DNA of 64,000 nucleotides from Octopus sinensis (GCF_006345805.1 NC_043009.1:20460001-20524000); one strand, 5' to 3'. Positions 20,323-63,112 are shown, counted from the stretch's first letter. Translations and numbers: made by a program. Notes: generated by a model from the sequence alone, not told the origin.

Positions 20323-20592
20323 TCAACCCCCTAAGCGGCTGGCCACCAGTTCCCTGTAGGCAATTGTGATATAAACAACCATCAAAGAAAGAACAAAGAC
20401 ATCGTCTAAGAGTCCAAACAAACCAAAAGCAGCTTCGGGAATTATGTCTAAGGGTGAAATAAGATAACATATCCCAAATACGGCACAGATCGTAATTCGC
20501 ATACGAAATATTATCATAAGTCCATTCCACGAGAAAAGTTCTTGTAGACAGTGTCGTAGAAGAGTTGGGATATCATTGAGATAGTCCATTAT
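20323..20592 (-). CDS. RNF170: RNF170 terminal coding exon (DUF1232-type C-terminal TM region)
   Basis: ttacag|ATAATG; IMDYLNDIPTLLRHCLQELFSWNGLMIIFRMRITICAVFGICYLISPLDIIPEAAFGLFGLLDDVFVLSLMVVYITIAYRELVASRLGG*. Total CDS 747 nt = 248 aa plus stop. Confidence 0.96.
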   Translation of the reverse strand: MMDYLNDIPTLLRHCLQELFSWNGLMIIFRMRITICAVFGICYLISPLDIIPEAAFGLFGLLDDVFVLSLMVVYITIAYRELVASRLGG

Positions 20593-21039
20593 CTGTAACA
20601 GAAAATAAGCATTGAGTGTTGAAGAATTAAAAGCTGGAAGGGAATCAAATATATTTATGCATCAATAAATATACATGTAGTGATACACTTACACACAATC
20701 TTACATGTGTGTCTGTGAAGACAATGTTTAAAATAAAGTTGTCACCCACCCCTTAAGACAGGTGAACGCATTCGAGGAAATGTTGGCTGCTATTTCTTCA
20801 GGTTTAACAATCAAATAGAAAAATGTTTCAGTTTTCTGTAGTCCCCTCCATTTATCAGATCTACTCCCTTACATAGAAGAAAAGAGTCTTCGACACAATT
20901 CATTATGTAACATTAACTTCTTTACATTAATCTTATATACACTGCTGTTATTACGTAAAGGGCAAAAAAAAAAACTAAATGAGAGAATCGTTCAACTTTA
21001 AAACAATTTTCCCTGGAATCAACAGGCAAAGGAGATGCC

Positions 21040-23300
21040 TTAGAGAGAATTACAGAGGAATCAAATAGCTGGACAAGGTCATGAAAGTTACAGAAGCAGT
21101 TATAGCCAAGCTAATTAGAAAAAGAGTTGCAGTAGTGTGGTTTTCTACCAGGGAGAAGCACTACTGATGCTTTCTTCCTAGTAAACCACCATAATTGGCT
21201 TTCATCAACCGGGAGAAAGTGTTTGGCAGGGTCACTCACTGCCTGATTTGGTGGTCATTAGAAAAGCTAGGAGTAAATAAATGGCTGACAAGTGGAGTCC
21301 AAGTTGTGTAAGAGGTACTGTCAGTAAGGTGACAGTGATATAATATAATATGTAATGAAATTATTGTATACAGTGCTCAGGTGCACAACAACTTGTCAGA
21401 AAGTGCATATAGAGTATATGCAGTAATGTACAAATGTCTGGAAAGCGAACAATGTATGAGTCAGATACATGCTTGTGTGTGTATGGAGGGGAGAAAATCA
21501 GGTGTAGTGCTGGCGAATCTCAGAAAGCATGGAAGTTTTGAAGGATGCAGTGCTCCGACAACTAACAACTGATGCCGGCAGTTTGTTCCATGCTTCAGCA
21601 ACACTCAGCGTGAAAAAATGTTTCCTAAAGTCATGGGAGCTGTGCTGTTTTCTGACTTTATAAATATGTCCACGGGTGTTAGATGGGTGGAGTTTGAAAA
21701 GGTGCTCAGAGTTATTGTTTGTACGATGGTTGATAATTTTATGGGTGTCTGCCAAGTCAGCTGCCAGACATCGGAGGTAAACAGTCACCAGGGCTTGGCT
21801 TTCAGTAGCCCCACTATTTATTATCATCCTCCAGGACATAGCAAGAGTTTTAAGACCTGGTGCCAGTGGGAACTCCTCTATACTGATGACATTGTTTGTA
21901 TAGCAGAATTAGAAAAGAAATTCTAAGAGTGGAAGCAAAATCCAGATTCAAAGTTAACTTTGCAAAGACCATATAAGTAGGAATACAAACAATATTCTAG
22001 TTCTCTCAGGAAAATGACCCTGTTCAATATGTAGAAAAAGTGTAAGGAGGACTTCTATACAATGTACTCAGGGTAAACTATGGCCATGAGAGGTACAGCG
22101 GAATCACTGAAAGATTTACAGTAAAAGTAGACTTTGTGTGTACATGCTAGGAATAAAACACCAAGCATACATTGGAAATAAATTTTCTCAAATGCCCAGA
22201 AGGTTTGCTAGAACCTTCTGTTATCCAGGTGACCTAATTAGTAGTGGAGAGTGTAGTTGCTAGAATAGGATGGCGAGAGTTCAGAGAGCTTTACTTGTAT
22301 TGGTAATAAACGAGCTCTTCCTCAGATTGTATGAGGTTTGTGTATGAACAGTAATGCTACATGGCAGTGAAACATAAGCCATGAATGCAGAGGACATGTG
22401 ATAACCAAAGAGAAAAGAAGTTTGCATACTTTTGCAGGTGTGCAATATCAATGTAAATTTATGATAAAGTACAAATAAGTTGAGAAAGAAATTGGACATA
22501 AGATGCATTAGATGTAGTGTGCAAGAGAAGACTGTGCTAATATGGTCATTTGGTGCACATGAATGAGGCACTAATAGCTAGATGTGGATAAAATATATGG
22601 AAGAGGGAAATCTAAAAAGATACAGAAGGGAATAGTGAAGACCAACCTCCAGATGATGACAAAGAACCAAAATGCTTGGCAATTTGCTAGGCTTGAGAAG
22701 ACCCATTCATCTCAGCCAAAAAGCACATCATCCATACCTCTAACCCCTTCACCCAGTTTGTACCTGTCAAGCCTTCCCAACAACTCATCTTCATAATAAG
22801 TGATTCCTCCTTATTCAATCTTTATACACCTTATTGTACCATGAGGGTACTTCATGGATAAAGAGAGAAAATTAAGAATGGCTAGGGGAATAAGTTGATC
22901 AGTGTGAAAGGAAAGTGGCAGATGGTTAGAGATGGAGCTAGAGATGAATGCAGTGAACATGGGTGGAAGCGTGATCAATGGTGAATCTGTTTGTAGGGGA
23001 GGATAAAGGAAAATAGGAGCAGGCAAAGATGAGCTGCAATATAATAAAACTGTAGGTAGGTGATGTGAAGTGTGGGGGAGAGATAGTGACAGAGTGAGTG
23101 GCAAAAATAAAGTCATCCTTTCCCACAATAAAGAGGGAAAGGAGGATATCGAGAATGAAGAATGGGTTTTTAAAAGGGTGTGGACACTGAGAGTGAAGAA
23201 AGGGAGTGGTTCCAGAGAGAGGGAGAGGTAACTGGTAGCACATACAAGGAATGATATATATGCGAGCCATAGTTAGAAGAGTGGAGGGATGGATATTAGG
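21040..23300 (+). mobile_element. Degenerate RTE LINE split by the CR1-type insertion
   Basis: KVFGRV..LIWWSLEKLG before the insertion and WELLYTDDIV, LHGSET after it. Boundaries approximate. Confidence 0.75.
21340..21777 (-). mobile_element. CR1/L2-group LINE 3' end inserted into an RTE
   Basis: LRCLAADLADTHKIINH...TRGHIYKVRKQHSSHDFRKHFFTLSVAEAWNKLP; same family as 60360-60700. Confidence 0.88.
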
Positions 23301-23329
23301 AAGATAAAAGAAGGAGAAGGATGGATGAA

Positions 23330-23900
23330 TATCGATTGGGTACAAAGCAGGAACCAGTGAGCATCTAGACACAAGCATAAGACTTTTAAGACCTTATATT
23401 CTACTGAGACAGAATGGTCTTTATGAGCACAGCAAACTGCAAACCATTTCACTCGTTTGTCATCTCCTTCATGAAGTTCCACATCTTGAGATCAGCCTTC
23501 ACTAATTCATCTCAATCTTCCTGAGTCTCCCTCTTCCACAAGTTTCATCTACATTTAATGACTGGCACACCACACAGCTGTTACCATACAGGTGCATCAC
23601 TTGAGAAAACCAGTGCCATATTCCCTCTTGTACACTACACCTGGTGTCTCTTGTGCCTTGTCTCATTCTAGTTTCCACATGCCTTCTGCATTCACAGCCC
23701 ATGTTTCACTACCATGTAGCATTGCTGTTCATATACAAGCATCATACAGCCTGCCTTTCACTCAGAGAGAGGTCTTTTATTACCAACAGAGGTAACAGCT
23801 CTCTGAACGCTCTCCATCCTGTTCTTATTCTAGCAACTACACTCTCAGAATATCCTCCGCTTCCCCACAAAGACACCAACCACTGTCAGGAAATGTTATT
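23330..23900 (-). mobile_element. Degenerate RTE fragment, tail-to-tail with the preceding copy
   Basis: Minus-strand LHGSET-type and TCGRGR..K motifs. Confidence 0.7.
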
Positions 23901-24196
23901 ACATCTGATTTCACATCTGAAAAGAAAACTGATAAGTAGGAACTACCACAGAATAATTAAGACTACTACAGCTATGAGAGAGAGTGTGAGAGAGGAAGAG
24001 AGATCTTATAGCCTTCATTCTCAGGTAAACATTATAAATGGCAGTAGTATAGACTATAGAAACAATAGCTTTGGGGCTAAAATAACAGACAGCTCAACTG
24101 TGTGTGTCTCTAATAAGATGGAAAACAACATGAACAAACCCGAGACTAAAACAACACATGATGTTTTGAAAGTGTAAATGCTTGAAAATTACTTAC

Positions 24197-24316
24197 AGAT
24201 CGAGGTTCTCCTGAGAATCTTCGATTATAATCATGAATTTGATTAAGTATATCAGCTCGTTCTTGTGTCGTAGAACGAGTTTCTGCATCGGTGAAACAAA
24301 GTAATAAAAGAGTAAC
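24197..24316 (-). CDS. RNF170: RNF170 exon
   Basis: tttcag|GTTACT...CGATCT|gtaagt; VTLLLLCFTDAETRSTTQERADILNQIHDYNRRFSGEPRS, with the DYNRRFSG.PRS motif; 120 nt. Confidence 0.95.
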
Positions 24317-25285
24317 CTGAAAAGAAATTAAATTCAGAGTCTGTCAGGAACTATTCATAGCAAAGTATCATTAAAGAATGTCACAAATACAACACCTGAG
24401 CATCTCACATTCGATTCAAAGATATTTGCAGTTGTCTCCCCTTCCTTTATAGACAGGAGTTCATTATTCAACATTTAAGAATTACAACAATGAGCTTAAT
24501 GTCTACAATGCTCAGGTGCACAACAGGTGTATAATGCAATAAATCTAATAGAAAAATATTAGCGGCAGGTAACATTACATTTGAATATTTAAGCAAAAGA
24601 GACAAAATGATAAAATATATTATTGGGGAGGGGAGGTCGTGATATTTTCTGTGAAGATGTGCAGCCTGATGGTTAGGATGTTAGGTTCACAATGATAAGG
24701 TCATAGGTTCAATTCCTGAATTCAACAGCATGTTGTATCCTTTATTTCGTGTTGCTCCAGTCTACTCAGCTGGAAATGAGTAACAGTCATATACTGGTGC
24801 AGCTTTCTCACTCTCTCCTTCCTTCATGCTCAGCAAAGTCAAGTGTAGGAGGGACAACAAGATATCTATATTGACCCACAACTACATAAAACACCCAAAA
24901 CAAGTGGCCAAAGTCTGGTACAAGCTTTCACATCATACTCGTCTGTGACTGATGGCTAAACTTTTTTAAGCTTTTAGCATTCCAAGTCAAATTGCACTGG
25001 GCAAAAAGAATTTTAATTACTGTAATTAATTATCTAATTATATAAAACTTCTTGATTCACAATATCCACTTATGCTAACACCGACTTAATGGTTTGTTTT
25101 TAGAAAATATTGTTTTGTATATAAAATTAATTTAAAATATAACTGATAGAACATAAGTTGATGACTTGAAAATAAACTTTTATAGTTACAAATATCTTTA
25201 AATTTAACTATTTTTCAACAATTTTCAACACAATAAATCAATTGTTTTATGTGAAAAATGGAATTCATTATGTTGTCAAACTTAC

Positions 25286-25359
25286 CTTTTGTCTACAAAC
25301 TGGACACTTAATTCCACCTAGCCATGATCCATAATGCCAATAAGCAATGATGCAGCTAG
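25286..25359 (-). CDS. RNF170: RNF170 exon, second half of the RING domain
   Basis: tttag|CTAGC...CAAAAG|gtaagt; (A)[24 protein letters not shown], completing the C3HC4 RING; 74 nt. Confidence 0.94.
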
Positions 25360-28300
25360 CTAAAAATAAACAATGAGTATATATATGGATGTGTATATAT
25401 ATGTGTATGTATATATGTAGACAGACAGATACAGTTATCTAGCTATCTATATATATGTATAGAAATGATGGCATAAGTAATTAGCGCAATAAATATGTTG
25501 TATCTTAATGAATAAATTGGTTTGATTCTAAGACAAGAGTAAGCAGCTGAAGTGTTTGTAAAGTGACAATAACTTGCCCAGCTACAGCAATACAACAGCT
25601 GACAAATACTTAATAAAATGTTTCATATCTCCCCGTGTCCTTGTAACAACGCACCTGGTGATTGAACTTCTACATGGCTCACTAGAAATGTTAAAAACAA
25701 CAGCTTTGTCCCCTTTAAATCATTTCCCTTCTGTCTTAAAAGGAAAAAAGATATTGAATGATATAGTCCTGAATAAAAGACAGGATGGTCATCACTGGAA
25801 TGCCTTTGGTTATAGGTTTATCTCTATTGCAGGGCAGACCTGGGGTTACCTGATCCCACCCAACCCCTCCCTCACTAAAAACAATAACAACCACCATAAA
25901 TAGATCAATTATTAGGACAAAATGTTGTAAGGGTAGATACAATAAATAAGGGTGCACTCTCTAAAGAAAGGTACATACTATAAATTATAATGGTAGATGT
26001 TATAAATGATAAAGGTACAACTGTAAATAAGGGTAGCTGTTACAAAAAGATATGGGTATACACTATAAATGAGAATATAAAATACTTAATAATTGCAAGT
26101 GGATTTAATGAACTATACCTCCAGCCTACCCCACAAAATACCAAAATGTGAATGGAATGAGAATAGAAACGCCTACTCCCACCCCACCACCAATGTACCC
26201 CACCGCCCTAATATGTAGCTTAGTGCTTAAGTTAGAAATCAATACAGTATTGATTATTAAAATTTAATATATCTAATCAATAGTGTTGTTTATAAAAATC
26301 TAACCTAACTGATCAATATTATATTGACTAACAAAAATCTTCTTAATCCAGTTAATAAGCTAAGCTGTAAACATTAATCTTGCCCTTAATTATATAAACA
26401 CTTAACCCTTCTCCGTTTATAAACAACAAATCAGTTATTTTTATCATAATTGGCTTGGGTTCATGAGGCTCTACATGGTCGCTAGAAATAGCAGTCAAAT
26501 GTTCCTCAAACCAAACACCACTGTCTTGAACAAAGAAGAACACACTGGATGTGTAATGCTGGACAATCCTCACAGAAGATGGTCATGGTTTGAATACGTT
26601 TTATCGCATGTTTATTGAACCGAAACTAAACTTCACTAGTATTAATGCCATGATAAAAATGGGTGTTCGTTTATGCCTAATGGTTAGGGTGTTGATCATG
26701 GGTTTGATTCCCAGACCAGATGGCACATTGAGTTCTTGAGCAAAACACTTCATTTCACATTGCTTAGTGATCATTTCAATATCTGACATGTGGCATACAT
26801 GTGGCACCTGTAGAGGCAGTGTTTATTTGATGGAAGTGAGCTTGAGTAAACACAAATTCTTCATCACCAACAACAAATCACCTGTGTGATTGTTCAACGA
26901 CAAACTGCAGAACCCTCATTCATCATCTAATGACAGGAGAGTTCATAATACACATACACCCACATACATATGGCGGTTGGTGTCGGAAAGGGCATCCAGC
27001 CGTAAAAACCCTGCCAAAACAGACAGTGAAGCCTGGTGCAATCTTCTGCCTAGCCAGCCCATCAAACCATCCAACTGATGCCAGCATGGAAAAATAGATC
27101 TTAAATGATGATGATGATGATACACACACACATGCATAAATAACTGATATTTATTCATTGTTAATGAACTGCACAGATGATTATGCAACTAAACATTATA
27201 TAAACAAACCCACCTGCTCTGTTTTATCTTCTATGTGTATACTGTGGCCTACACAACTGTACAGTCCAACTAAATGAAATTCAGACCACAATAATGCAAG
27301 TCCTTCTCAAAGTTATTCTTTGCATAAAAAGGAATACACACGGAATTCTAAATACTGGTTGTCATCCAATTTAAATCTAAATTGCACTAGATATAAAAAT
27401 ACATATATTTGGGGATATGCAGTGCTTGAGAAGATCCAGCAAGCCAAGTGAGATCGTAGCCATGGCCGATGCCAGTGTTGCATAGCTGGCCCATTTAAAA
27501 GCATCCTTTAATCATTGGGCAATATACTGTGCTTGTGGAGACCTGTTGAACCAAGTGAAATTGGAGTTGTGGCCAATGCCAGTGCCGCCTATGCTGGTGG
27601 CATGTAAAAAGTACCATTCGAGCATGGTTGTTGCAAGTGCTGCCTGACTGGTACCATACCAGAGGCACATAAAAAGCACCCAGTCAAACCCTCCAACCAT
27701 GCCAGCATGGAAAGCGAACATTAAATGACAATGATGATGGTATATATATATTATAAATGCAAAGTATGGATGTAAAATCTGCATTTCAATACTTGCAGCA
27801 GTGAAACAAAATTTGTTAAGGTAGAAACTGATAAAAGTAAATTTTCTATGGCTGAATAACATTCCTGTTACCAACCCTCACTTGTTAGGCAATATTCCTC
27901 CATGGCCAGACATGTTTTTACGAAAGTTTGGAGAAAAAAGGATATTGCTTGTATGAAGGTGACACTCATTTACAACTTTCATGTGATGCCAAGACAAAGG
28001 GACACACATACCGCCACATAATTATCATCAACTCTCAACATCTATCTTCCACACCACAAGGACTACAGTAATAGACACTTGTTCAAGGTACTATGCAGTG
28101 GAACTGAACCCGAATCCATTTGATTGAGAAACAACTTCTTAACCACACAGCCAGATGAGAACTTATTTTATGAAAGAATAGTGAGTAGTGTTTGTTGATC
28201 GAACTCTCATCTTTTTGTTGATCAAGCAAGCCATGAATTAAGAGTTAATAAGATGATTCCCACCTGACAATCAGTTGAAGAATTCACTGCCATCATATGA

Positions 28301-29961
28301 CCATATGGCCATTTTGCCTTCCCCACCACCCACCCCCTACTTTTGGTTAAACACATACAGGAGAAGATGTTGCACTGCTTGGTCAAGTGATTGCTACAAA
28401 AAAAAAAACTTGGCAAAAAGATATATTGGGGGACAAACCTGAATAAGGGAACCAGTGAGAAATCAGGAATGGAAAAATCAAAAAAGATTAGAATAAAAAT
28501 GATGAGCAACATTACTAGATGGTGTCCTCCTCTTATCTCTTCCAACTCTACTATGACAGTCTCCTATTTCCTCAACTTGTCAACAATAGGTTGAAGCAAT
28601 GCTTTGTAATTCTGTAGGTTTGGGTTCAATCCCATCCCGTGACATCCTGAACAAATGTCTCCTACCATAGCCTAAGGTCAATCAAAGCTTCCTAACTAAA
28701 ATTAAGTAAATGGAAACTGTGGAGAAGCTTGATGTGTGGACCATTTCTCTTTATAATCCAATACCCTATTTAGCACCATCATCTGACCCTTGGCTAGTTT
28801 TGAGTTCACTGTTGAGCTCAAGTGAGGTCCCTATTTCAAGATAACTTCTTCCCTTCTTCCTTCCAGAAACCCTGACAAAAGGATCTGATTCAGTCGTGTA
28901 ACCAACCAGTTCTACTTCAACACACCCACCCACCCCTCACGCAAAACTTTTGTTGTCTCCTCTTTCTACCCTCCCTCCCTCCCACCCAATATTTCATCCT
29001 CAAACATTCAAGCAAGCTGCAAAGTCCTTCCCTCTGCTCTTCCTAACATTAACAGTTCAACAATTTACGTTATTGTGGTTGATGTAATAATAATGAATGG
29101 ACTCTTCTGTCGAAGATGATGTATGACTGTCCAGCTTCTACAAAAACAACCTGCAGCAAAAAATGATTTGTTTAAAGTGATCAAGTGCATGTGCCATACA
29201 TTAGCTCACTTCCTCCAACAAATCAATGTTGCCTGAACAGGTGTATGGAGTACCATGTGGCAGGTGTCAAAGTGATTGCAAAGCAACGTGAGGTGAAGTG
29301 TTTTGCTCAAGAACACAATGCACCACCCGGTCTAGGAATTGAAACCACAATCTCGCAATCATGAGTACAATACCAAAACCATAAGGCCATGCATCTTCAT
29401 GCATGGCCTTGGTGTTGGGAAGGACATCCAGCCATAAAAACCCTGCCAAAACATACATTGAGACATGGTGCCGTCTTCTGCCTGGCCAGCTCCTATCAAA
29501 CTTTCCAGCATGGAAAGTGGACGTTAAATGATGACGATGTGAATGTAAAGAGTTATAAGAGATGGAGGATAGTCATGTTGGACTTTTGTATAAATTTCAT
29601 GGAAAATCAATCTTCACAGAAATGAAATTTTAAATGTATCAAATGTTATGATCCACAAGAACAGTTACCAAATTTTTCCCTGTTGCAGTGTGCCAAATGA
29701 CAAAGGGCTCTAAGGAATGGCAAGTTGCTCTGAGATCCATTCAATCCATAACAGCCTGAGAAAATGGACAGATGATGATGATGTGTATACAGAGAGAAAT
29801 TATTAGTATCTGTGAATTAACTGTAAAATATACATCATCTTCATCAGTTGTCTGTGAGTTTGTATAACATCTTTAAAAGCAGACTGTAAAATGTGTACTG
29901 GTGTTCCATTTATTTGTCTGTTTAGTGAAACAGTCTTTATTTGATCTGGAATTAAACTTAC

Positions 29962-30137
29962 CACAAAATACATGACCGCAATTTGTTTCAACTCCAAAAG
30001 AAAGATCATCAAGACAAACAGGACAATTCGATTCATTCTGCCTTCGATTAGGATTGCTTACAGGTACGCGGTTCAGGTGTTCTCGAGCTGTTTGGACATT
30101 TTCTAGACTATCAGGATGGATTATTTGATGGTTATAA
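29962..30137 (-). CDS. RNF170: RNF170 exon, first half of the RING domain
   Basis: tttag|TTATAAC...TGTG|gtaagt; YNHQIIHPDSLENVQTAREHLNRVPVSNPNRRQNESNCPVCLDDLSFGVETNCGHVFC; 176 nt. Confidence 0.95.
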
Positions 30138-32413
30138 CTAAAATATAAATGAAACAGACAAGACATTAACAGATTTATTTTAGGTTTCAATCAAGACATC
30201 ATAGAAAAGATACTTTACTCATTTTGAGTCACAAATTATTAACAGCATTCATAACAACAACAACAACAACAACTACAAATACCAAAATATTCTAACACCT
30301 TGCAACCAGGTTAAGCATAAAAAAATAAAAAGGCCTCAAATTTTTTTTTTTCTCATAGGCAACAATAATTATGACAACAATATACTTGAAATAATTAAAA
30401 TATTTGTGACTGATTTTGGTAATCTTTGTAATTAGTAGAAGGTAATGAGCTGGCATAATCATTACTACTTTGGACAAAATGTTAAACAGCATTTCTTCTG
30501 ACTACATTCTGAGTTCAAATGCTGCCAGGTCAACTTTGCCCCTTTCAGAGTCAATAAAATATGCACCAGTTGAGCACTAGGGTCAATTCCATCGTCCCCT
30601 ACCCTACCCCCAAAATTGCTGGCCTTGAGCCAAAATTGGAAACCAATATTTGTAATTTGTAAATAAGTTAAGAAAATTTGTAACATTAAAATGAAATGAT
30701 TAAAACCAACATCTGAAAGCAATTTTCGGCCGTGTCATTTTTGTGTTCTTTCTCAAAGAAGTGGAGCTGGGGTTAAAAATGTGCACAAAATCAGTTGTAG
30801 TAAAAGAGAAAACTGTACAGGTATGGAAATGTTAATGCGTATGAAGAGGGGCCAAATTATCTAAAGAGAAAGAACCTGCAAAAAAGGAAGAGGTGGGAAG
30901 AAATGACTGAAGCCAGAAGGCAGATAAGGCACCACAATAAATGGTAAACACTGTTCTGGGGAAGACCTGTCAAACCCCTGCCATCAATTGTTCTGATTAC
31001 TTAGGATTCATCTGAAAAACAACTGATAAAGAATCAATTTATTCTTTATTGTCACATCTGTTTCTAAAGATGGTAACATATTAGGTGATGTACCAAGTCA
31101 AATGGTGAAGTACTAGGTGAAGTTACAACACCATTCAGAGAAACAAAATATACAAACAAATCTGATGAATGACCAAGCTTTAATACAGTAAAACTGACAT
31201 CAAAATTATATAATTCTTCAAACCATTTCCTTTTGATTCCCAAACTTTACTCTTGTCATTTTAACAAATTGCATAAACTTATAATCAATCATTAGTTAAA
31301 ATGCAAAATTTTAACATTCCTCGTGTTTACGGACAGTGGACGACAGAATCAGCAGAACACTGACCAAACTAGCTTAGTTAAACTTTGATTTTAAATGTTC
31401 TTGTTGTTGTTCCAGTTCCAGCCCAGATCAAGCAGGCCCAGGATCAAAGCTATTACAGCCTTGATCCACCTTGTCTCAGACGACGCTGTCTAAAAACGTT
31501 CTTTTGACAACCCTTTATAGTATAGAACAATTTCTGACAGTCCTTTCTAGTATAAAATACATTTTGATAACCCTTTATTGTCCCCATAATCAAGACATAA
31601 AACTAAAGAGAGAGAGAGTGAGAGAGAGAGAGAGTGTGTGTGTGTGTGTGTGTGTGTGTTATAAAATGGTTTTCCTGATTCTTCCGCCTGTTATTGTTTT
31701 AATACATGAAGTCAAATCAAGTCACTTGTCAAAGAAATACAACACCGAAATGCATACATACATATGTAAACACACACAGATATATGTATGTGTGTGTATA
31801 TATATATACACACACACATTCATGGAAGTGGCCGGTTCAAAGGAACAGTGTCAGGCCACTCCAAACAAGGAATCTGAGAATCAAGGTTTTTAATGCATAA
31901 CCGTCAGTCCGGCAAAATATATTTTTGTCGAACTGAGAATAAGTGTGTGAGGTAATAAGACATTTTTGTTAAGTTGAGATATCTAGCGGTTTCAAAATGA
32001 TGATAGGATCATCGACGTAGATACGATTTACACTAGTATGGTGCTGAACCGACTACTCTTATGTAATAATCATTACCCAAAAAACGGATGCAGAAACTTT
32101 CTGGTCGTTTCTGTTGATCACATATCTAGGTTGATGACCAGAATATATGATGTTTGTGTAAGAGCAGGAAGTATTATCTGGAAAATAACCCTCTTTGGCA
32201 GATGTGTAGTACTCCCCTAGAAGGCCGAAAATAGACACCTTCTGATGCATAATTATATCAAAGTAAAACGTGGGCAGATGTGTTATAAAAGTTGAGGGCG
32301 AGGCAAGGAGGGCACGACGAAATATTAATAGATGTTTATTTATGAAATTAACTAACAACAGAAATGAATCAGTTATTTTCACTATCAACTTATATAAAGT
32401 GACAATAGCTCAC

Positions 32414-32520
32414 CGTTTTTTCATGGTCGCAAAAATTGTAATTAGAATGAATGGCAATATAGTGAGGAGACATGCATAGATGACTTCATCGCCAACGCCT
32501 TCAAGGAAAGTTGATGACAT
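32414..32520 (-). CDS. RNF170: RNF170 first coding exon (N-terminal transmembrane helix)
   Basis: ATG at 32520; MSSTFLEGVGDEVIYACLLTILPFILITIFATMKK(R), matching the RNF170 'EGV.D.V' plus TM motif; donor gtgagc; 107 nt. A likely acceptor near 32625 suggests a non-coding upstream exon. Confidence 0.9.
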
Positions 32521-32624
32521 TGCTAATCCAAGAGAGAAGAAATAGTAGAAGGAACTTCAGAACTGTGTTGCTTTACAGGTTTAGAAGAAAGATGTTTCTA
32601 ATTTTACAGTAATTATAAACCAAC

Positions 32625-33681
32625 TGTAGATTAAATTTATAGCTTCAATTTATTTTACAAACTGGTCTAGAAAATGGAGAGGAGAATGGCATTAAAAGGT
32701 TTTATAAAATGTATATAAAGAAAGTTGTCAAGTCTTGTCTTTAATTAAACGCTGTGGATGACAGGAGAACACCGTTTGTGACACGTTTAATTAGAAAGAC
32801 TTGTCAGAAATAGAAAACTTTCCCTCACTATTTAAACTTCCAACTTTCTTTGAGCAAACACCTTGTTGACATTTAGTATTAAAAAATAAATAAAACATTT
32901 TAAACTCCTAAAGAATTAATAAACAACATCTCTGTAAGAGAAATATATCAAATAAGTTAAATATTTATAACATTGTGACAAATAACTTTGTAATTTACAC
33001 AAAAGTCTCTATTTGTTTACGACAAACTTAAGTTGCTCAAACAATTAACAAACTCTACTAACATTTCAGTTTCTGTTGCCCGATTATAGCTATATAAACT
33101 AATAAAGTAGTTCAATAACTATTTATATATAGAGAGAGAGATGTTAAATTAATTCAGACGATGATTAATAAATAATTCTACCCCAAAATAACTTGACAGT
33201 CTTCGGTGTTGTTCAACTTTTAGCGGAACTCGCTACAGTTATCTCCCTTGAAACAACCTTTTCTTTCTTTTTTTCTTTTATACTTTCTTCATTTCAGGCT
33301 GATGAAAAAATACGGAACGCTTCTCGTGCAATATATTTTCTCAGCTTTCATATAAGTATTGAAAAATGTTTACATACAAATACAAAAGGATAAGTTTATT
33401 TGCTATTATTTTACATCATTTTAATATTTCATTAATATTTACTGGCAACATGAAGTCAGTATTGATGTTGTATCTTCCTTTGTGAAGTAATGTTTATGAC
33501 AAAGTTACTACTCCATACATTTAACAGGTCGTTGTCATCAGCCAAGTCGACGACTTCCACTTTGGAGAAACGTCTTTAAATAATAAAAACCTCCAGGGAT
33601 GCTCGCTGATAATAATTCCATACTTTAATATATAAGAGTCTACAAATAATTACCTGACTACGTTGTCAATAAACTGACAAA
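32625..33681. promoter_or_regulatory. Putative bidirectional promoter and 5' UTR region shared by RNF170 and Hook
   Basis: Divergent ATGs at 32520 (-) and 33682 (+); no recognisable TE in between; local CpG clusters near 33200-33330 and 33530-33690. TSSs cannot be determined from sequence. Confidence 0.6.
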
Positions 33682-33720
33682 ATGGACCGAACCTACTCTT
33701 ATTCAATGTTAATTAAATGG
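33682..33720 (+). CDS. HOOK3: Hook-family protein, first coding exon
   Basis: ATG...TGG|gtaagt; MDRTYSYSMLIKW, ending at the conserved Trp in phase 0 and joining exon 51115 in frame. Short, so less certain. The symbol is nominal because vertebrate HOOK1-3 orthology is unresolved. Confidence 0.72.
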
Positions 33721-34199
33721 GTAAGTTGGTTAATTATTATTAAAACTCTTAATTACTCCATCTCTCTCCTCTTTTATAGACTTTGTACATTTGCTTACTC
33801 AACTTTTTTGGCCGTTTTCTTTCTTGATCTTTTCATTTATAATTAAATTAGATTGGGATTCTTTAAAAATACTCAAATTCAGAATCTGTTATTTCATATA
33901 AACTAAATTTAAAGCAATGTTAATTACTGTTTTTTGATAAATCTTGCCTAGAGATAGTCAAATCTTGTCTATAGAAACATTGAAGTACCACCCATTATTC
34001 GTCCTCCTAGCAACTGTGTACATAGTTTTAAGGCACACAAACCTTATATTTACTTTATAAACACTCAATCACATTAATGTCTTGCGATTGATCTAAATTA
34101 CCATTTTTTTAACTATTTCCTCTTGGAATATTTCACTCTGTTCTACGAATAGCTGTAAATTATGACCTACCGTAATTCTCTTAATCGTATATAAATATA

Positions 34200-34345
34200 T
34201 ATATATAGAGAGAGAGACAGATAGATAGATATGGTTAGATAGATAGATATGGATAGATAGATAGATAGATATGGTTAGATAGATAGATAGATAGATATGG
34301 TTAGATAGATAGATAGATAGATAGATATGGATAGATAAATAGATA
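34200..34345. repeat. Compound (GATA)n minisatellite with ATGG/ATGGTT interruptions
   Basis: Read directly from the sequence; in Hook intron 1. Confidence 0.93.
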
Positions 34346-35997: not shown

Positions 35998-36067
35998 TAG
36001 GGGTCCCCAAACTTTTTAGACCATTGACCCCCTTAAATAGTCCCATCGACCACTTTGGAGAACCCTG
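35998..36067. mobile_element. 70-bp hAT (Charlie-like) mini-MITE
   Basis: Imperfect TIRs TAGGGGTCCCCAAACT and CAGGGTTCTCCAAAGT; perfect 8-bp TSD CTCTACAG at 35990 and 36068. Confidence 0.8.
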
Positions 36068-37947: not shown

Positions 37948-37980
<33 letters not shown>

Positions 37981-38127
37981 CACACACACATATATACATA
38001 CATATATATATATACACATATATATACATACATATATACACACACATATATATACACAAATATACATACATAAATATATATACTTATATATATACATATA
38101 TTTGTATATGAAGCCAGTATGCTCCGA

Positions 38128-39010
38128 TGGATGTGTAATGTCAGTGTACATACTCGACAGAGTGTAAGTACCTTGAGAGAGAAGTTGGACCTAAGAAGCA
38201 TCAGTTATGGTGTGGTCATGTGGCAAGAATGGATGAGGATAGCTGTGTGAAAAAGTGCCACACCCTAGTGATTGAGGGAACCTGTGGAAGCGGTAGACCC
38301 AGGAAAACCTGGGTGAGGTGGTGAAGCACAACCTTCGAACATTAGGCCTCACCGAGGCAATGACTAGTGACCAAGACCTTTGGAAATATGCTGTGCGTGA
38401 GAAGACCTAGCAAGACAAGTGAGACCATAACTCATGACCTTTACCAGGGGTGTAGGCAGCCCACTTATGCATTCCTTTCCTTCTTTGGACACTAAACTCT
38501 GCTTGCGAAGACCTGTTGGGGCAAATGAAATCGAAATTGAAACAAATTTGATGACTGGCACCCGTGCCAGTGGAGCGCAAACAGCTCCATCCGAGCGGGA
38601 TCACTGCCAGAGCAGCTGTCTGGCTTCCGTATCAGTGGCTCATAAAAAGCACCATTTGAGCATGATCGTTACCAGCGTCGCCTTACTGGCACTTGTGCTG
38701 GTGACACGTGAACAAAATATTCAAGCGAGGTCATTGCCAGTGCTGCTGTACTGACTCCTGTGCAGGTGGCACATAAAAAACGCCATTTGAGCATGGCCGT
38801 TGCCAATACTGCCAGACTGGCCCTTGTGCCGGTGGCACGTAAAAGCACCCACTACACTCTCGGAGTGGTTGGTGTTAGGAAGGACATCCAGCTGTAGAAT
38901 CTCTACCAGATCAGATTGGAGCCTGGTGCAGCCATCTGGTTCGCCAGTCCCCAGTCAAATTATCCAACCCATGCTAGCATGGAAAGCGGACGTTAAATGA
39001 TGATGATGAT
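38128..39010 (+). mobile_element. RTE LINE 3' end with long 3' UTR and (GAT)n tail
   Basis: WCGHVARMDEDSCVKKC...TCGSGRPRKT, continuing into the abundant '...CATGGAAAGCGGACGTTAAATGATGATG' sequence. Confidence 0.85.
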
Positions 39011-39070
39011 GAAATACATGCATACATATACATACATATATACATATGTATATATATGTGTGTGTGTGTG

Positions 39071-48200: not shown

Positions 48201-50148
48201 ATGTTACTCTGGTACTGAAAATATATAAAAGCCTCCTATCCTGTTTATATTTTCTATGGCTGATATCCCAATAATTTTATGTTAAGTCTGTTTTGGGGCT
48301 CCTTTAGTCCTCCCACCTCTGTTGTAATGCCAATGATAGCATGAGGAAAAGGTACCTCACTCACACTGTATGACATACACTGCACAAACAAAGTTGACTG
48401 GGTGTTTCTCTGTCGTTGCTGTTGTGTGAACTGGATAACATATGGACCGTGACCAGAGTGACTAGAAAAGACCGGTGGGGGGGGGCATGGAAAGGAAGAA
48501 GGAAAAAAAACAACTGACATAAATTGACGCTAATGATGTGTGTGTGTGTGTGTGTGTGTGATCACAGTCATCATTTAACATCCATTTACCAAACTAGTAT
48601 GGGTTGGACAGTTTGACAGGAGCTGGCAAGTCAGAAGACTATGCCAAGCTTGATTGTCTGCATAAACACGATGTGTATCGTCACCATCATCATCATTTTA
48701 CACCCTGCATCCCATGCTGGCGTGCCTTGGAGTACATATACATATAATGTATATGTGCTTAGGAAACTGTCCCCAACATACTCTCAGCTGGCCCATGGAA
48801 GTATTAAAATGATGACGATGATGATATACAAAACACACACATACACATCATGAAGTATGTCTACATGTGTATGTTTGTGTGTTATCATCATCCTTATCAT
48901 CGTTTAACATCTGCTTTCTATGCTGGCATGGGTTGGACATACCCGATTATTCTGTCCGTTTTCCTCCCCCTCCTTCCCTTTCTCCCTCCTATCATTATAT
49001 GTATTCATCCTCTTGATTCCTCCAACACATACACACACAATATCTTCTCCACAAACCCATCCTGCATACACACTTTAAATTTTTTCCTCTTCATTTCCTC
49101 CCAGTACTTTCCTAACAACAAGGTCTGATGGACACAATGTAAAAGCATGACTTTGATGCAAGTCTGACAAGGTGCCTCTCCAAGGCCCAAAAACACGAAT
49201 ATTACATAATTTTTCTTTTAAATAAACTGGCATTACAAATGGAGACAATACGAAAACATGTGTAACTTATAACTAAAGATATGTTAAAGAATTTTCTTTG
49301 TCTTCTTCTTTTCATTGGTCATCATCATCATCATCATCATTTAAAGTCTGCTTTCCATGCTAGCATGGGTTGGACAATTTGACTGAGGACTGACGAACCA
49401 GATGGCTGCACCAGGCTCCAATCTGATCTGGCAGAGTTTCTACAGCTGGATGCCCTTCCTAACGCCAACCACTCCAAGAGTGTAGTGGGTGCTTTTACAT
49501 GCCACCGGCACGAGGGCCAGTCAGGCAGTACTGGCAACGGCCACGTTCAAATGGTGTTTTTTACATGCCACCTGCACAGGAGCCAGTCCAGCGGCACTGG
49601 CAACGACCTCACTTGAAACCTCTGTGTTCCATGCTAGAGTGGGTCAGACAGTTGAACTGGTTCCAATGGGCCCAAGGACTGCATCATGTTCCAATGTCTG
49701 TTTTAACATGATTTCTCTGGCCTGATGTTCCTGATAATGCAAAACAGGAGAATAGTAATGATGACCCTTCCCAATCTCCTAGGTAACAAAACTTACCAGC
49801 TTCTTCTAGCGAGTCATCCAAGCATTTAAGAGAAACTATTTCCAGTGTGCTTCTAGTGCATACTGCTCCAGTGCGTCCCTCACAAAGTTTACCTTCTCAG
49901 ATAGTCTGCTTGTGGCTCCACTGCATCTCTTATGTGTCCATAATTTCTATTGGGTACAATGTATACTTATCACAGGAGACCTACTTTTTCTTTGTGTCAC
50001 CAATAGCCTCACTATGTTAAGGAGATTTAATAAGACTGAAATATAACCAGAGTTATCACCCCTGTCTACTAAATGTCAAACTATTCTCACTGTATATTTC
50101 CAATTTCAATTTTAAAAGACTCTGGAGTGTCATCTCATTACAGTTTTA

Positions 50149-50575
50149 CAGCCAAAACGTTGTGTTAACAAACAAGATGAGGACAAATATCTATCAAATG
50201 TAAATAATTCCTCATCTCTTAAATATAGAACTGTATTATCTAATTGGTACGGAGCCGACATTAGACTTTGGAACCAAAACTAATACCACCTGGCTTGAAG
50301 GAAGGATAGGAAAATATTAGATTTATAAGCCCTAAAATTCACTCCATAATTGCATATGGCATAGTGGTTAAGAGCACGGGCTACTAACCCCAAGATTCCG
50401 AGTTCAATTCCAGGCAGTGGCCTGAATAATAATAATAGCAACAACATTGAAACATGCCCAGGTTCAAAACTTCCCCAAGACATCTGATGAAGACCGGAGG
50501 GTATATATCAGCCGAAACATTATGTTAACAACAAATAAGATGAGAACAAATATCTGTCAAATGTAAATATTGTAC
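50149..50575 (+). mobile_element. tRNA-like head plus hammerhead repeat unit (candidate retrozyme or Penelope-type pLTR derivative)
   Basis: ~57-nt direct repeats 360 nt apart (50149 and 50509); A box TGGCATAGTGG at 50357; B box GAGTTCAATTCC at 50400; hammerhead core at 50479-50526. Confidence 0.7.
50479..50526 (+). ncRNA. Minimal type I hammerhead ribozyme motif (decayed copy)
   Basis: GACAT-CTGATGA-A-GACCG-(loop)-CAGCC-GAAAC-ATT-ATGTT; stem I GACAT/ATGTT; stem II has two mismatches; the upstream repeat keeps the CGTT form of stem III and the cleavage triplet. Confidence 0.65.
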
Positions 50576-51114
50576 ATTAGTTAGTTATCTCCCTTTGCGT
50601 TTATTAAACAATGTTCACCAATGTTTACCTCACACAGTCTTGATAGTGTTGGTTCATTGATGTTATTGTGCTGGCTACAGTATGTTAGCCCATATTTTCA
50701 GTATTTGGGTTGTTATATGATATCACGGTATTTGTAGGCTCCTTGATAACAGCATTCAAAAGAAATCAATCACAAAATATTCTGATTGATCTGTGTTGAA
50801 TATGAAAACATTACGGACATAATTAAGATGGCTTAATATATTCTACCTCACTTACCTGAAAAGCTAACATTAGATTCAATGTGTTTTAAGAAATAATTTG
50901 TGATGACTGTTTCTTAGTATTAAAATTCAATAATGGAGTATTCAAATGGAGTGGTGAGCACCCTTAGAATGATTGACGTTTGTCGAGAAGCTAAATTCTT
51001 CATTGCAGTCTTTGAGAATATAATGAAAAATTTAACTTCTTAACAAGGTTGTTTGAGCTTGTTGATTTTTGTTATTTTTTTTTTTAATCCTTGACTATTT
51101 TGTCTCTTCCTCAG

Positions 51115-51200
51115 CTTGATACCTTCAATATTGAAGCTCCATACCACAATACGGAAGAATTAAGCACTGGAATTGCCATGTCGCAAATCTTAAATAAAAT
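51115..51200 (+). CDS. HOOK3: Hook-family protein exon 2 (Hook/CH-like domain)
   Basis: ttcctcag|CTTGAT...AAAAT|gtaagt; LDTFNIEAPYHNTEELSTGIAMSQILNK(I), comparable to human HOOK3 IQTFNVDAPCQTVEDLTNGVVMAQVLQKI (from memory); 86 nt. Confidence 0.92.
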
Positions 51201-61159: not shown

Positions 61160-61201
<42 letters not shown>

Positions 61202-61875
61202 ATCATTATCATCAGCATGATCAACATTTAACATCTGTTTTCCATGCTATCATGGGTTGAATGGTTCAACAGGGGTAGTAAAGCCAAAGAACTACACAAA
61301 GTTTCACTGTCTGCTTTGACATGGTTTTTCTAACTGAATGCCCTTTCTAATGTTGACCATTTTACAAAGTGGACTGGATGCTATGTGGCACCAGCACCAA
61401 CAAGGTCACCAAACAACTTACAAAACAAAAAATATGTAAGTATATATATATATATATGTTGTTATGTCCTGTTATTATTATTATTTTTATTCTATTTTTG
61501 TATTTATATTCGTGTAACATTATCTGTTTTTCCATCCTTGTCTTCATATACATTCGATGCTTTTTTCCAAGGAATCTAATACTCTTAGCTTAGTTTTTCC
61601 TTGGTGCTGGCCAGATTGGAGCAATCTCAAGATTAATCAGCCGAAATTGCGAGGATGATCCAGTTCTTGACTGAGGATAAAAGGCTTCGAATGACTCGTC
61701 CTTGTTTTTTTGTATCGTCTATCTGGATGTTTTGTTGTCCCTTTTTGTATCACCTAGTTGTCTGAATGTTTTGCGTTCTTGTCCCCTTTTGTATTTTATT
61801 TTGTACATATATATATATATATATTGTTTAAATTATCCAGGTTATCTGAATGTTTCTCTCTGTTTTCTCTCCTAG

Positions 61876-61948
61876 TGACCCCAAATTCTTCCATGACCAG
61901 TGGTTAATGTCCATGTATTCAGATCCAGGAAACAATAGAAAACAACGG
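61876..61948 (+). CDS. HOOK3: Hook-family protein exon 3
   Basis: ctcctag|TGACCCC...CAACGG|gtaact; DPKFFHDQWLMSMYSDPGNNRKQR, comparable to DPAYFDENWLNRIKTEVGDNWRLK; 73 nt, phase 2-0. Confidence 0.88.
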
Positions 61949-63061
61949 GTAACTTTTCACTTTTTTATTCTTTTTTTTTTTATATTTATTTACTTTGCAT
62001 TCAGCTTTCTTCTTTTACCACCACTTCTTGCGCTACCGCCATCACTATTTCTTCCCCTCTCTACTATCACCACTACTATATACAACTACTGTCACCATCA
62101 CTACTACTACAGTTGCTGCTGTACAGTTATCTCTGTACACACACACACACACACACACATTATACAATGCTTGCAGGCATAGCCATGTTAAGAAGTTTGT
62201 TTCCCAACCATGCCATGCTAGGTTCAATCCAACCACATGACAACTTAGGCATGGTGTTTTACCCTAGCTTTGGGGCAGTCCAAGACAGTGTGTAGAAGCC
62301 TGTCAGATGGACTCCACCTCTAATTCAAAGCTACTTCTTGTTACACTGTCACACCGATTCTACTCTGGGATTCCATTGAGAATAAATGTGTCTGTGGGAT
62401 ACTCAGCCACTTTGCATGTTAATTCAATGAGTTCTGTTGATTGAACAATTGGATGTTCCTACATCAATCCCAGTGGAAGGGTCCATTATAATCCTATATA
62501 CACTACAGGTTTATATAAATATTGATTTCAAATTCCAGCACAAGGCCAGCAATATCAGGGGTGGGAGTAAGATGATTACATCAACTCCAGTGTTCTACTA
62601 ATTTTATCGACCCTGAAAGGATGAAAGGCAAAAATCAACCTTGGCAGAACTTGAACTCGGTAACTAAACATTTGATGAAATGCTGCTAGGCATTTGGCCC
62701 AATGTGCCAACAGTTCTGCTGACACACCACCCTGGTTTTTATAAATATTAAAACGAAGGAAGACCTATCAGTTTGATGTCATTCCTGAATTTGTAGCATT
62801 TAATCATAAAGCAGGAGACCTTGTCAAAAAGGTTAAACCTTTGAGTGGGATTCTAGTTACATGAAAAATATTTAAAGGGTAAACAATGCTAAATTAGGGA
62901 TTTCTTTACTTTACGATCTGTATTGTTTTATGCTTCTGCCAAATTCCACTCCCAAGGCACCATTCAATAAAAGAAACATTCACCCAAATCTGTGAAGTTG
63001 TGAGGCAAACTTTTTCACCTCAGCTGATACCTATGTTAATATTTTCTGTTTAATTTTTCAG

Positions 63062-63112
63062 ACAGCAAATTTACAAAAGATTCTGAACAGAGTTCAAGAG
63101 TTTTTTTCCAGT
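63062..63112 (+). CDS. HOOK3: Hook-family protein exon 4 (gene continues beyond the window)
   Basis: tttttcag|ACAGCA...TCCAGT|gtaagt; TANLQKILNRVQEFFSS, comparable to ISNLKKILKGILDYNHE; 51 nt. Confidence 0.88.

What the first reader, a model, noticed from the sequence alone, without database searches (positions are those of the whole stretch)
20323..63112. RNF170 and Hook are head-to-head, as human RNF170/HOOK3 are: ancient microsynteny
Seen: RNF170 (-) and a Hook gene (+) diverge, with start codons 1161 bp apart, although Hook intron 1 is 17.4 kb and full of TEs. Established: human RNF170 and HOOK3 are divergent neighbours on 8p11. Inference: the pair has been retained since the bilaterian ancestor, despite heavy cephalopod genome rearrangement, through a shared promoter that co-regulates an ER IP3R ligase and a dynein adaptor. 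A minus-strand donor-like site (CAG|GTAATT, 33653) could mean the first exons overlap.
Basis: partly seen in the sequence, partly recalled or inferred. Interest (0 to 1): 0.7.

Follow-up and report, generated by a model that had tools for sequence, protein, structure and literature searches.

The report
Ancient head-to-head RNF170–Hook gene pair
In this octopus chromosome segment the ubiquitin-ligase gene RNF170 and the dynein-adaptor gene Hook sit back to back about 1.2 kb apart, as they do in oyster, an annelid, an acorn worm, a gar and a mammal, so the pair is real and ancient but is an ordinary example of a well-described class of conserved divergent gene pairs.

Summary
The window is Octopus sinensis CM016871.1:20460001-20524000. 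RNF170 (minus strand, 5 coding exons, 32520 to 20323) splices to a 248-aa protein 100% identical to the annotated Octopus RNF170-like protein. Four Hook exons (plus strand, 33682 to 63112) encode a HOOK_N domain (E 1.5e-22). The start codons are 1161 bp apart and Hook intron 1 is 17,394 bp.

The same divergent arrangement, with no gene between, occurs in O. vulgaris, Argonauta, an oyster, the annelid Owenia, the hemichordate Ptychodera, a gar and a pangolin (CDS-start gaps 146-5443 bp). No Hook lies within 10 kb of RNF170 in two echinoderms and a scorpion. Descent from at least the bilaterian ancestor, with some losses, is well supported.

The shared-promoter explanation is plausible but not shown. 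The only non-coding sequence conserved between Octopus and Argonauta lies around Hook exon 1 (33181 to about 33810), where CpG is not depleted. An acceptor-like site 2 nt before the RNF170 ATG is conserved. No transcription start data were available.

The minus-strand donor at 33653 is no better than chance and is not conserved. The pair meets the criteria of Irimia et al. 2012 for conserved ancestral microsyntenic pairs (595 described). Interest is low to moderate.

The parts
20323..32520 (-). RNF170 coding region. The five coding exons are 32520-32414, 30137-29962, 25359-25286, 24316-24197 and 20592-20323 (stop included). The product is 248 aa, with a RING C3HC4 domain and DUF1232.
   Evidence: Sequence reading. 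The product is 100% identical to P0001, RNF170-like of Octopus vulgaris. Pfam hits. The gene range in the public annotation matches.
32521..33681 (.). Spacer of 1161 bp between the two start codons. It is 29% G+C and has no sequence repeated elsewhere in the window.
   Evidence: About 15% of random 1161-bp stretches of the window are also repeat-free, so the lack of repeats alone is not significant.
32521..32550 (-). Acceptor-like site on the RNF170 strand, a polypyrimidine tract plus TAG ending 2 nt before the ATG (TTCTTCTCTCTTGGATTAG|CAATG). It may mark an upstream non-coding RNF170 exon.
   Evidence: Conserved in Argonauta as TTTTCTCTTCT...GCCTAG|CAATG. Similar sites occur at about 0.75 per kb per strand, so this is suggestive only.
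33181..33810 (.). Conserved non-coding module around Hook exon 1 and the candidate promoter region. The best blocks are 33215-33252, 33298-33339, 33492-33549 (88% identical) and 33654-33681.
   Evidence: It is the only orthologous non-coding alignment between Octopus and 24 kb of the Argonauta locus. CpG observed/expected is about 1.0 at 33001-33700, against a window median of 0.26.
33648..33656 (-).
   Evidence: Present, with PWM score 7.9 against 4.6-11.8 for the eight real donors. Sites this good occur about 1 per kb per strand, and it is not conserved in Argonauta.
33682..33720 (+). Hook coding exon 1 (MDRTYSYSMLIKW), with a GTAAGT donor.
   Evidence: It is identical in position to the annotated CDS start, conserved in Argonauta, and matches the equivalent short '...W|GT' first exon in five other species.
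33721..51114 (+). Hook intron 1, 17,394 bp. It contains dispersed repeats and a retroelement-like ORF at 44349-44858.
51115..51200 (+). Hook coding exon 2 (LDTFNIEAPYHNTEELSTGIAMSQILNK, then two bases of the next codon).
   Evidence: It forms part of the HOOK_N match and is supported by Argonauta P0121.
61876..61948 (+). Hook coding exon 3 (DPKFFHDQWLMSMYSDPGNNRKQR).
63062..63112 (+). Hook coding exon 4 (TANLQKILNRVQEFFSS). The gene continues beyond the window; the annotated product is 723 aa.

Best explanation
RNF170 and the single invertebrate Hook gene (orthologue of vertebrate HOOK3) form a conserved ancestral microsyntenic pair in 5'-5' orientation. The pair was inherited from at least the last common ancestor of spiralians and deuterostomes.

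The most likely reason it persists is that the 5' ends of both genes use one compact promoter region. In octopods this would be the conserved, CpG-undepleted module at about 33181-33810, next to Hook exon 1. Any rearrangement breakpoint between the genes would then strip at least one gene of its promoter, and the target for such a breakpoint is only a few hundred to about 2000 bp.

Shown: the two gene models, their orientation and spacing, the same arrangement in four phyla, and the position of the only conserved non-coding module.

Inferred: that transcription of both genes starts in or beside that module, with RNF170 possibly using a non-coding first exon spliced to the conserved acceptor-like site 2 nt before its ATG, and that selection on this arrangement, not chance alone, has kept the genes together.
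For: Gene models:
-.

Conserved divergent adjacency with no gene between (gap between CDS starts):
- O. sinensis and O. vulgaris, 1161 bp.
- Argonauta, 1873 bp.
- Saccostrea, 828 bp.
- Owenia, 200 bp.
- Ptychodera, 605 bp. Its neighbour had no Pfam entry on record; translation shows it is Hook.
- Lepisosteus, 5443 bp.
- Manis, 146 bp.
- The Hook first exon and its intron position are conserved in all of them.

One regulatory module:
- Across the 24-kb Argonauta locus, only the exons, a dispersed repeat and the 33181 to about 33810 region align to the octopus window.
- CpG observed/expected is about 1.0 in that region, against a window median of 0.26.
- The acceptor-like site just before the RNF170 ATG is conserved in Argonauta.
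- The 200-bp Owenia spacer contains ETS, NRF1, YY1 and CRE-like motifs, and the 146-bp Manis spacer is 75% G+C with CpG observed/expected 1.0.
- Transcripts from another cephalopod (species not identified) carry 415-467 nt of RNF170 5' UTR. If the octopus UTR is similar and unspliced, the RNF170 TSS lies within about 750 bp of the Hook ATG.

Fit to a known class:
- 54.8% of conserved ancestral pairs in human are 5'-5', with short spacers and raised co-expression (PMC3514665).
Against: - No TSS, RNA-seq or co-expression data for octopus could be reached, so 'shared promoter' is untested.
- The octopus start codons are 1161 bp apart, which leaves room for two separate promoters.
- The half of the spacer next to RNF170 (32541-33180) is not conserved with Argonauta. 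A fast-evolving separate RNF170 promoter could lie there.
- No sequence motif is shared by the spacers across phyla.
- The RNF170 5' UTR of the other cephalopod does not align to the window (score 18 against a shuffle mean of 15.1, SD 1.7).
- No Hook lies within 10 kb of RNF170 in two echinoderms and a scorpion. The linkage is therefore dispensable.
- The gar spacer is 5.4 kb.
Confidence: 0.7

Rival explanations
1. Neutral persistence. The pair is ancestral but has been kept mainly because the spacer is a very small target for rearrangement breakpoints. There would be no selection for co-regulation, and the two genes would have independent adjacent promoters.
For: - CDS-start gaps are tiny in most species, 146-1873 bp.
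- The pair has been lost in some lineages without obvious consequence.
- No cis-motif is shared across phyla.
- The repeat-free state of the octopus spacer is not statistically unusual (15% of random stretches).
- The two proteins have no known functional link (my own knowledge).
Against: - Retention in at least four phyla over more than 550 million years, always in the same orientation, is the pattern that Irimia et al. found enriched beyond random expectation and associated with co-expression.
- Octopod introns and flanks expanded greatly (17.4-kb intron 1) while the spacer stayed short.
- There is a single conserved non-coding module, not two.
- This rival and the best explanation are not mutually exclusive.
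Confidence: 0.25
2. Regulatory entanglement of the genomic-regulatory-block type. Enhancers for one gene would lie inside the introns of the other, so the genes cannot be separated.
For: - Hook intron 1 is very long, 17.4 kb.
- A patch of CpG observed/expected 0.8-0.94 lies in RNF170 intron 1 at 31700-32400.
- This is one of the two mechanisms proposed for conserved pairs (PMC3514665).
Against: - Neither gene is a developmental transcription factor or signalling gene.
- No orthologous conserved non-coding sequence was found in RNF170 introns, or in the first few kilobases of Hook intron 1 that the Argonauta locus covers; the rest of intron 1 was not compared.
- The apparent extension of similarity to 34332 is microsatellite.
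- Blocks of this kind typically show long spacers and mixed orientations, not a fixed 5'-5' pair at under 2 kb.
Confidence: 0.04
3. Independent (convergent) juxtaposition, or an annotation or assembly artefact, rather than common descent.
For: None found. Only the patchy distribution (absent within 10 kb in echinoderms and a scorpion) could be read this way.
Against: - The same two orthologues, in the same orientation and with no intervening gene, occur in eight genomes from four phyla produced by different projects.
- The exon sequences were read directly from the DNA.
- The chance of two given genes among roughly 20,000 becoming direct neighbours repeatedly is negligible.
Confidence: 0.01

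Closest known systems
Conserved ancestral microsyntenic pairs (CAMPs) of Irimia et al. 2012, Genome Res 22:2356 (PMC3514665), co-regulated 5'-5' subclass, for example HSPE1-HSPD1
   Same: - The two genes are unrelated and are direct neighbours in at least four major animal lineages.
- They are divergently transcribed, the orientation is conserved in every species that keeps the pair, and the spacer is short.
- The pair is inferred to date to the bilaterian ancestor, like 593 of the 595 CAMPs.
   Different: - I could not check whether this pair is among the 595, because the supplementary tables are not held.
- Co-expression and a bidirectional promoter have been shown for HSPE1-HSPD1 but not for this pair.
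- Presence outside Bilateria was not tested.
Mammalian bidirectional-promoter gene pairs (Adachi and Lieber 2002, cited in PMC3514665): head-to-head genes with TSSs less than 1 kb apart, usually sharing a CpG island
   Same: - Orientation is divergent.
- The mammalian (Manis) spacer between CDS starts is 146 bp, 75% G+C, with CpG observed/expected 1.0.
- The octopus region next to Hook exon 1 is the local CpG-undepleted patch.
   Different: - The octopus spacer is AT-rich (29% G+C) and is 1161 bp between start codons.
- TSS positions are unknown, so the <1 kb criterion is untested.
- No TATA-less or CpG-island architecture can be claimed for octopus.
Metazoan microsyntenic blocks retained in coleoid cephalopods (Schmidbaur et al. 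2022, PMC9023564)
   Same: An ancient linkage that survived the coleoid genome reorganisation. Such blocks tend to be co-expressed.
   Different: - In my recollection that study scored blocks of three or more genes, so a two-gene pair would fall outside it.
- RNF170 and HOOK do not occur in its held supplementary files.
- The third gene here (AMP-binding, ACSF2-like) is linked only within octopods.

Membership tests
RNF170 orthologue group (E3 ubiquitin ligase RNF170) | An N-terminal membrane segment, a C3HC4 RING finger and a C-terminal DUF1232 membrane region, in a protein of about 250 aa that best matches RNF170 of other animals. | tested here: met
   Pfam zf-C3HC4 family hits at residues 73-121 and DUF1232 at 195-229. 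It is 100% identical to annotated Octopus RNF170-like and 44-54% identical to RNF170 of molluscs, annelids, echinoderms and vertebrates over at least 97% of its length.
Hook family (dynein/dynactin activating adaptors; HOOK1-3) | An N-terminal Hook (calponin-homology-like) domain. | tested here: met
   The 83 aa from the four exons hit HOOK_N at 1.5e-22, profile positions 3-78 of 146.
Hook family (dynein/dynactin activating adaptors; HOOK1-3) | A central coiled coil and a C-terminal cargo-binding region. | tested here: inconclusive
   These parts lie outside the window. The public gene call that starts at this ATG gives a 723-aa product with PF19047 and PF05622, but I did not read that part of the gene.
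Conserved ancestral microsyntenic pair (Irimia et al. 2012) | The two genes are not paralogues. | tested here: met
   Their domain content differs: RING plus DUF1232 against HOOK_N plus HOOK.
Conserved ancestral microsyntenic pair (Irimia et al. 2012) | [quoted passage not shown] | tested here: met
   Direct neighbours in Mollusca, Annelida, Hemichordata and Vertebrata. Not within 10 kb in Echinodermata or in the one arthropod examined.
Conserved ancestral microsyntenic pair (Irimia et al. 2012) | Listed among the 595 published pairs. | not testable with these tools
   The supplementary tables are not held. No open paper mentions the pair in this sense.
Bidirectional-promoter gene pair | Divergent (5'-5') orientation. 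| tested here: met
Bidirectional-promoter gene pair | Transcription start sites less than 1 kb apart. | not testable with these tools
   No octopus transcript or CAGE data were reachable. Start codons are 1161 bp apart. The only transcript evidence is from another cephalopod, whose 5' UTRs (415-467 nt) do not align to the window.
Bidirectional-promoter gene pair | Correlated expression of the two genes, or one element driving both. | not tested
   This needs expression data or reporter assays.
Genomic regulatory block (developmental gene plus bystander) | A developmental regulator whose conserved non-coding elements lie in the neighbour's introns. | tested here: not met
   Neither gene is a developmental regulator (my own knowledge). 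No orthologous conserved non-coding sequence was found in RNF170 introns or in the few kilobases of Hook intron 1 that the Argonauta locus covers.

The most novel reading that the evidence does not exclude
In octopods the two genes may be driven from one roughly 600-bp element beside Hook exon 1. RNF170 transcription would start there, or even beyond Hook exon 1, so that the 5' ends overlap in antisense. It would run through a non-coding first exon spliced over about 1 kb to the conserved acceptor 2 nt before the RNF170 ATG. The same single-promoter design could be the ancestral state and could predate Bilateria; a Hook-like gene is annotated in the cnidarian Exaiptasia, but its neighbours could not be examined. 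That would make this one of the oldest obligate bidirectional promoters linking two functionally unrelated housekeeping genes.
Probability: 0.2. Interest if true: 0.35.

Novelty: new member of a known kind. Interest (0 to 1): 0.25.

Why it matters
This is a clean example of a divergent gene pair kept together for more than half a billion years, including through the coleoid genome reshuffling and repeat expansion.

Such pairs are useful as anchors for orthology and synteny analysis. They are also natural test cases for two questions: whether bidirectional promoters constrain genome rearrangement, and how a promoter can keep its architecture while its sequence turns over completely (29% G+C in octopus against a 75% G+C CpG island in a mammal).

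It does not open a new question. Hundreds of such pairs are already catalogued, and nothing here points to a special functional coupling of IP3-receptor turnover with dynein transport.

Tried and rejected
1. Transcript evidence for the RNF170 5' end. Public RNA-derived contigs encoding the 77%-identical cephalopod RNF170 (P0002) carry 415-467 nt of 5' UTR. This UTR does not align to the octopus or Argonauta spacer (best local score 18 against a shuffle mean of 15.1, SD 1.7). An apparent similarity that I saw by eye to 33540-33620 is therefore rejected.

2. I scored it with a simple donor matrix written from recalled human splice-site frequencies. Its score of 7.9 lies within the range of the real donors, but such sites occur about 1 per kb per strand, and it is not conserved in Argonauta. 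Other minus-strand donor candidates (34171, 34102, 34043) lie in non-conserved or microsatellite sequence.

3. Shared cis-motifs across phyla. Only AT-rich 8-mers are shared, and classical bidirectional-promoter motifs appear only in Owenia.

4. Repeat-free spacer as a sign of selection. 15% of random stretches of the same length are also repeat-free.

5. Apparent Octopus-Argonauta conservation extending to 34332. This is (GATA)n/(TA)n low-complexity sequence.

6. Widening the species sample.
   - A protein search with the octopus Hook N-terminus found one protein.
   - The same search with the oyster Hook N-terminus returned 13 short proteins.
   - Neither gave full-length Hook proteins whose contigs could be matched to those of RNF170.
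   - The Lineus look-up found nothing on record.

7. Published lists. RNF170 and HOOK are absent from the held supplements of PMC9023564 and PMC8851819. The supplement of PMC3514665 is not held.

8. RNA genes. Rfam and tRNA scans of the window found nothing.

I replaced this with local translation and tblastn.

Full report
**What the window is.** The RNF170 protein spliced from the window is identical to a public Octopus protein. The gene that encodes it lies at CM016871.1:20480323-20492520 of assembly GCA_006345805.1 (Octopus sinensis), which is 12,198 bp, exactly the span 20323-32520 of the window. The window is therefore CM016871.1:20460001-20524000 on the plus strand. The O. vulgaris assembly GCA_951406725.2 has the same locus. 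Over the 1.4 kb that covers both first exons and the spacer, the two species are 99.86% identical.

**RNF170 gene model.** On the minus strand the ATG has its A at 32520 and is followed by a GTGAGC donor after 32414. The further exons are 30137-29962, 25359-25286, 24316-24197 and 20592-20323, each with AG/GT boundaries. Together they make 747 nt, coding for 248 aa plus a stop. The product is 100% identical over its full length to 'E3 ubiquitin-protein ligase RNF170-like [Octopus vulgaris]'. It is 44-54% identical to RNF170 from bivalves, gastropods, annelids, hemichordates, echinoderms and vertebrates. It carries a RING finger and DUF1232.

**Hook gene model.** On the plus strand the exons are:

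- 33682-33720, MDRTYSYSMLIKW with a GTAAGT donor;
- 51115-51200;
- 61876-61948;
- 63062-63112.

The resulting 83 aa match Pfam HOOK_N at 1.5e-22.

**Spacing and splicing.** The public gene calls in both Octopus assemblies put a 723-aa (or 716-aa) HOOK_N+HOOK protein and RNF170 head to head with exactly this 1161-bp gap.

Two lines of evidence argue against that:

- The Argonauta Hook model reads MDRTYSYSMLIKW-LDTFNIEA through the same junction, and the exon with its donor is conserved in Argonauta DNA.
- A short first exon ending '...SL(L/M/I)xW|GT' sits at the equivalent place next to RNF170 in oyster, Owenia, Ptychodera, gar and pangolin.

**The side remark on transposable elements.** 'Full of TEs' is only partly borne out. 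22% of intron 1 has further copies inside the window, no more than the window average. One ORF (44349-44858) resembles an ORF at 58175-58765 that I take, from recall, to be a retrotransposon ORF tail; neither has a Pfam hit. The Pfam reverse-transcriptase hits lie in intron 2.

**Is the arrangement ancient?** I used RNF170 orthologues to fetch their genomic neighbourhoods with 10-kb flanks. A Hook gene lies immediately upstream on the opposite strand, with nothing between, in these species:

| Species | Group | Gap between CDS starts |
|---|---|---|
| O. sinensis, O. vulgaris | cephalopod | 1161 bp |
| Argonauta hians | cephalopod | 1873 bp |
| Saccostrea echinata | oyster | 828 bp |
| Owenia fusiformis | annelid | 200 bp |
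| Ptychodera flava | hemichordate | 605 bp |
| Lepisosteus oculatus | gar | 5443 bp |
| Manis javanica | pangolin | 146 bp |

- The Ptychodera neighbour had no Pfam entry on record, so I translated it and found the Hook N-terminal exons.
- The pangolin neighbour is a 718-aa Hook whose first exon MFNVESVERVELCESLLTW is, from my recollection of the human sequence, of the HOOK3 type.
- Human gene order THAP1-RNF170-HOOK3-FNTA is reported in PMC4527799.

In contrast, no gene is called upstream of RNF170, and no Hook exon is detectable within 10 kb, in the starfish Asterias, the crinoid Antedon and the scorpion Centruroides. Whether Hook is further away or on another chromosome in these animals could not be determined.

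By parsimony the pair was present in the common ancestor of Spiralia and Deuterostomia, that is, at least in the bilaterian ancestor. It was broken, or stretched beyond 10 kb, in the echinoderm lineage and in at least one arthropod. Non-bilaterians could not be examined.

**What keeps the genes together?** This part is inference.

I compared the window with 24 kb of the Argonauta locus. Only three kinds of sequence align: the exons of the three genes, a dispersed repeat of about 170-200 bp, and one non-coding region around Hook exon 1.

- Upstream of the Hook ATG this region runs from 33181 to 33681 at 60% identity overall. The stronger blocks are 33215-33252, 33298-33339, 33492-33549 (88% identical, including 36 consecutive identical bases) and 33654-33681.
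- Downstream it fades by about 33810. The apparent extension to 34332 is microsatellite.
- The same stretch is the local patch where CpG is not depleted, with observed/expected about 1.0 at 33001-33700 against a window median of 0.26. This is the usual mark of a germline-unmethylated promoter.

Next to RNF170 exon 1, conservation extends only about 20 nt upstream of the ATG. Those nucleotides form a polypyrimidine tract plus TAG that ends 2 nt before the ATG in both Octopus and Argonauta. This pattern fits a model in which RNF170 has a non-coding first exon further upstream, near the conserved module. It does not prove it, because sites of that quality occur at about 0.75 per kb per strand.

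Further indirect support comes from other species:

- The spacers in Owenia (200 bp, with ETS-, NRF1-, YY1- and CRE-like motifs) and pangolin (146 bp, 75% G+C) are too small for anything but a common promoter region.
- Transcripts from another cephalopod (species not identified) show RNF170 5' UTRs of 415-467 nt.

Evidence against a strong claim:

- No octopus TSS or expression data were reachable.
- No motif is shared across phyla.
- The repeat-free state of the spacer is not unusual.
- The linkage has been lost in some lineages.

The main rival is neutral survival of a pair whose spacer is simply too small to be hit by breakpoints. It cannot be excluded and is not exclusive of the promoter model.

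**The overlap hint.** The minus-strand site CAG|GTAATT (last exon base 33654) exists and scores 7.9 on a simple donor matrix, where the eight real donors score 4.6-11.8. The window holds 126 sites at least that good, about one per kb per strand. The Argonauta sequence aligned to it reads differently. It is therefore not evidence for overlapping first exons. That question needs transcript data.

**Comparison with what is known.** Irimia et al. 2012 (PMC3514665) defined conserved ancestral microsyntenic pairs as unrelated genes tightly linked in at least four major animal lineages.

- They found 595 such pairs, 593 of them dating to the origin of Bilateria.
- 54.8% are in 5'-5' orientation in human, with short spacers, conserved orientation and raised co-expression, which the authors attributed to shared or bidirectional promoters.

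The RNF170-Hook pair meets the two defining criteria that I could test: the genes are unrelated, and they are direct neighbours in Mollusca, Annelida, Hemichordata and Vertebrata. I could not see the published list. No open-access paper discusses this pair in an evolutionary or promoter context.

A squid retains 275 ancient microsyntenic blocks, against 216 in a scallop (PMC9023564).

**Verdict.**

- The evolutionary inference is supported.
- The mechanism is plausible but untested.
- The donor-site hint is not supported.

This is a new, or at least not explicitly described, member of a well-known kind. It is of modest interest as a clean example and as a possible test case for promoter-constrained synteny.

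Noticed in passing
window 13025-13205 (minus strand): An isolated exon-like ORF encodes the NAD kinase C-terminal domain ([61 protein letters not shown]). It hits Pfam NAD_kinase_C at 3e-22 and has a good donor (AAG|GTTAGT). It lies antisense inside an intron of the AMP-binding gene, and no gene is called there in the public annotation. It could be a nested gene, an unannotated gene or a pseudogene fragment.
   Followed up: partly
window about 2750-19289 (plus strand): An AMP-binding (acyl-CoA synthetase, ACSF2-like) gene of 608 aa ends at 19289, tail to tail with RNF170 and 1033 bp from its stop codon. The same three-gene order (AMP-binding, RNF170, Hook) is present in Argonauta. In Owenia the downstream neighbour is a BSMAP gene instead, so this linkage is seen only in the octopods examined.
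   Followed up: partly
window 15270-16361 (plus strand): A mariner-type DNA transposon remnant lies inside the AMP-binding gene. The ORF at 15439-16191 hits Pfam Transposase_1 at 2e-22.
   Followed up: partly
window 58663-59103 and 59629-60333 (plus strand), Hook intron 2: Two reverse-transcriptase fragments (Pfam RVT_1, 3e-13 and 6e-17) point to non-LTR retrotransposon remnants. They are flanked by long (TA)n/(TATG)n-type microsatellites at about 59100-59560 and 60660-61250.
   Followed up: partly
window about 9965-10140, 26970-27140, 29409-29548, 37834-37916, 38853-39076, 45115-45290, 49286-49490; also many copies in L003 (Argonauta): A dispersed repeat of about 170-200 bp is shared by Octopus and Argonauta at 65-80% identity, so it is an old SINE-like family in octopods. 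It is the most abundant repeat in the window. It has no tRNA-like or Rfam match.
   Followed up: no
window 31700-32400 (RNF170 intron 1): A second patch with little CpG depletion (observed/expected 0.8-0.94, against a window median of 0.26) lies just downstream of RNF170 exon 1. It is not conserved with Argonauta.
   Followed up: no
L015 (Manis javanica) 9855-10001: The pangolin RNF170 model is 408 aa, against about 258 aa in other vertebrates, and starts only 146 bp from the HOOK3 start codon inside a 75% G+C stretch. The N-terminal extension is probably an over-prediction through the shared CpG island.
   Followed up: no
L007 (Asterias), L016 (Antedon), L009 (Centruroides), positions 1-10000: In these three species the 10 kb upstream of RNF170 holds no called gene at all and no Hook exon. 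The pair has been broken or stretched in echinoderms and in at least one chelicerate.
   Followed up: partly
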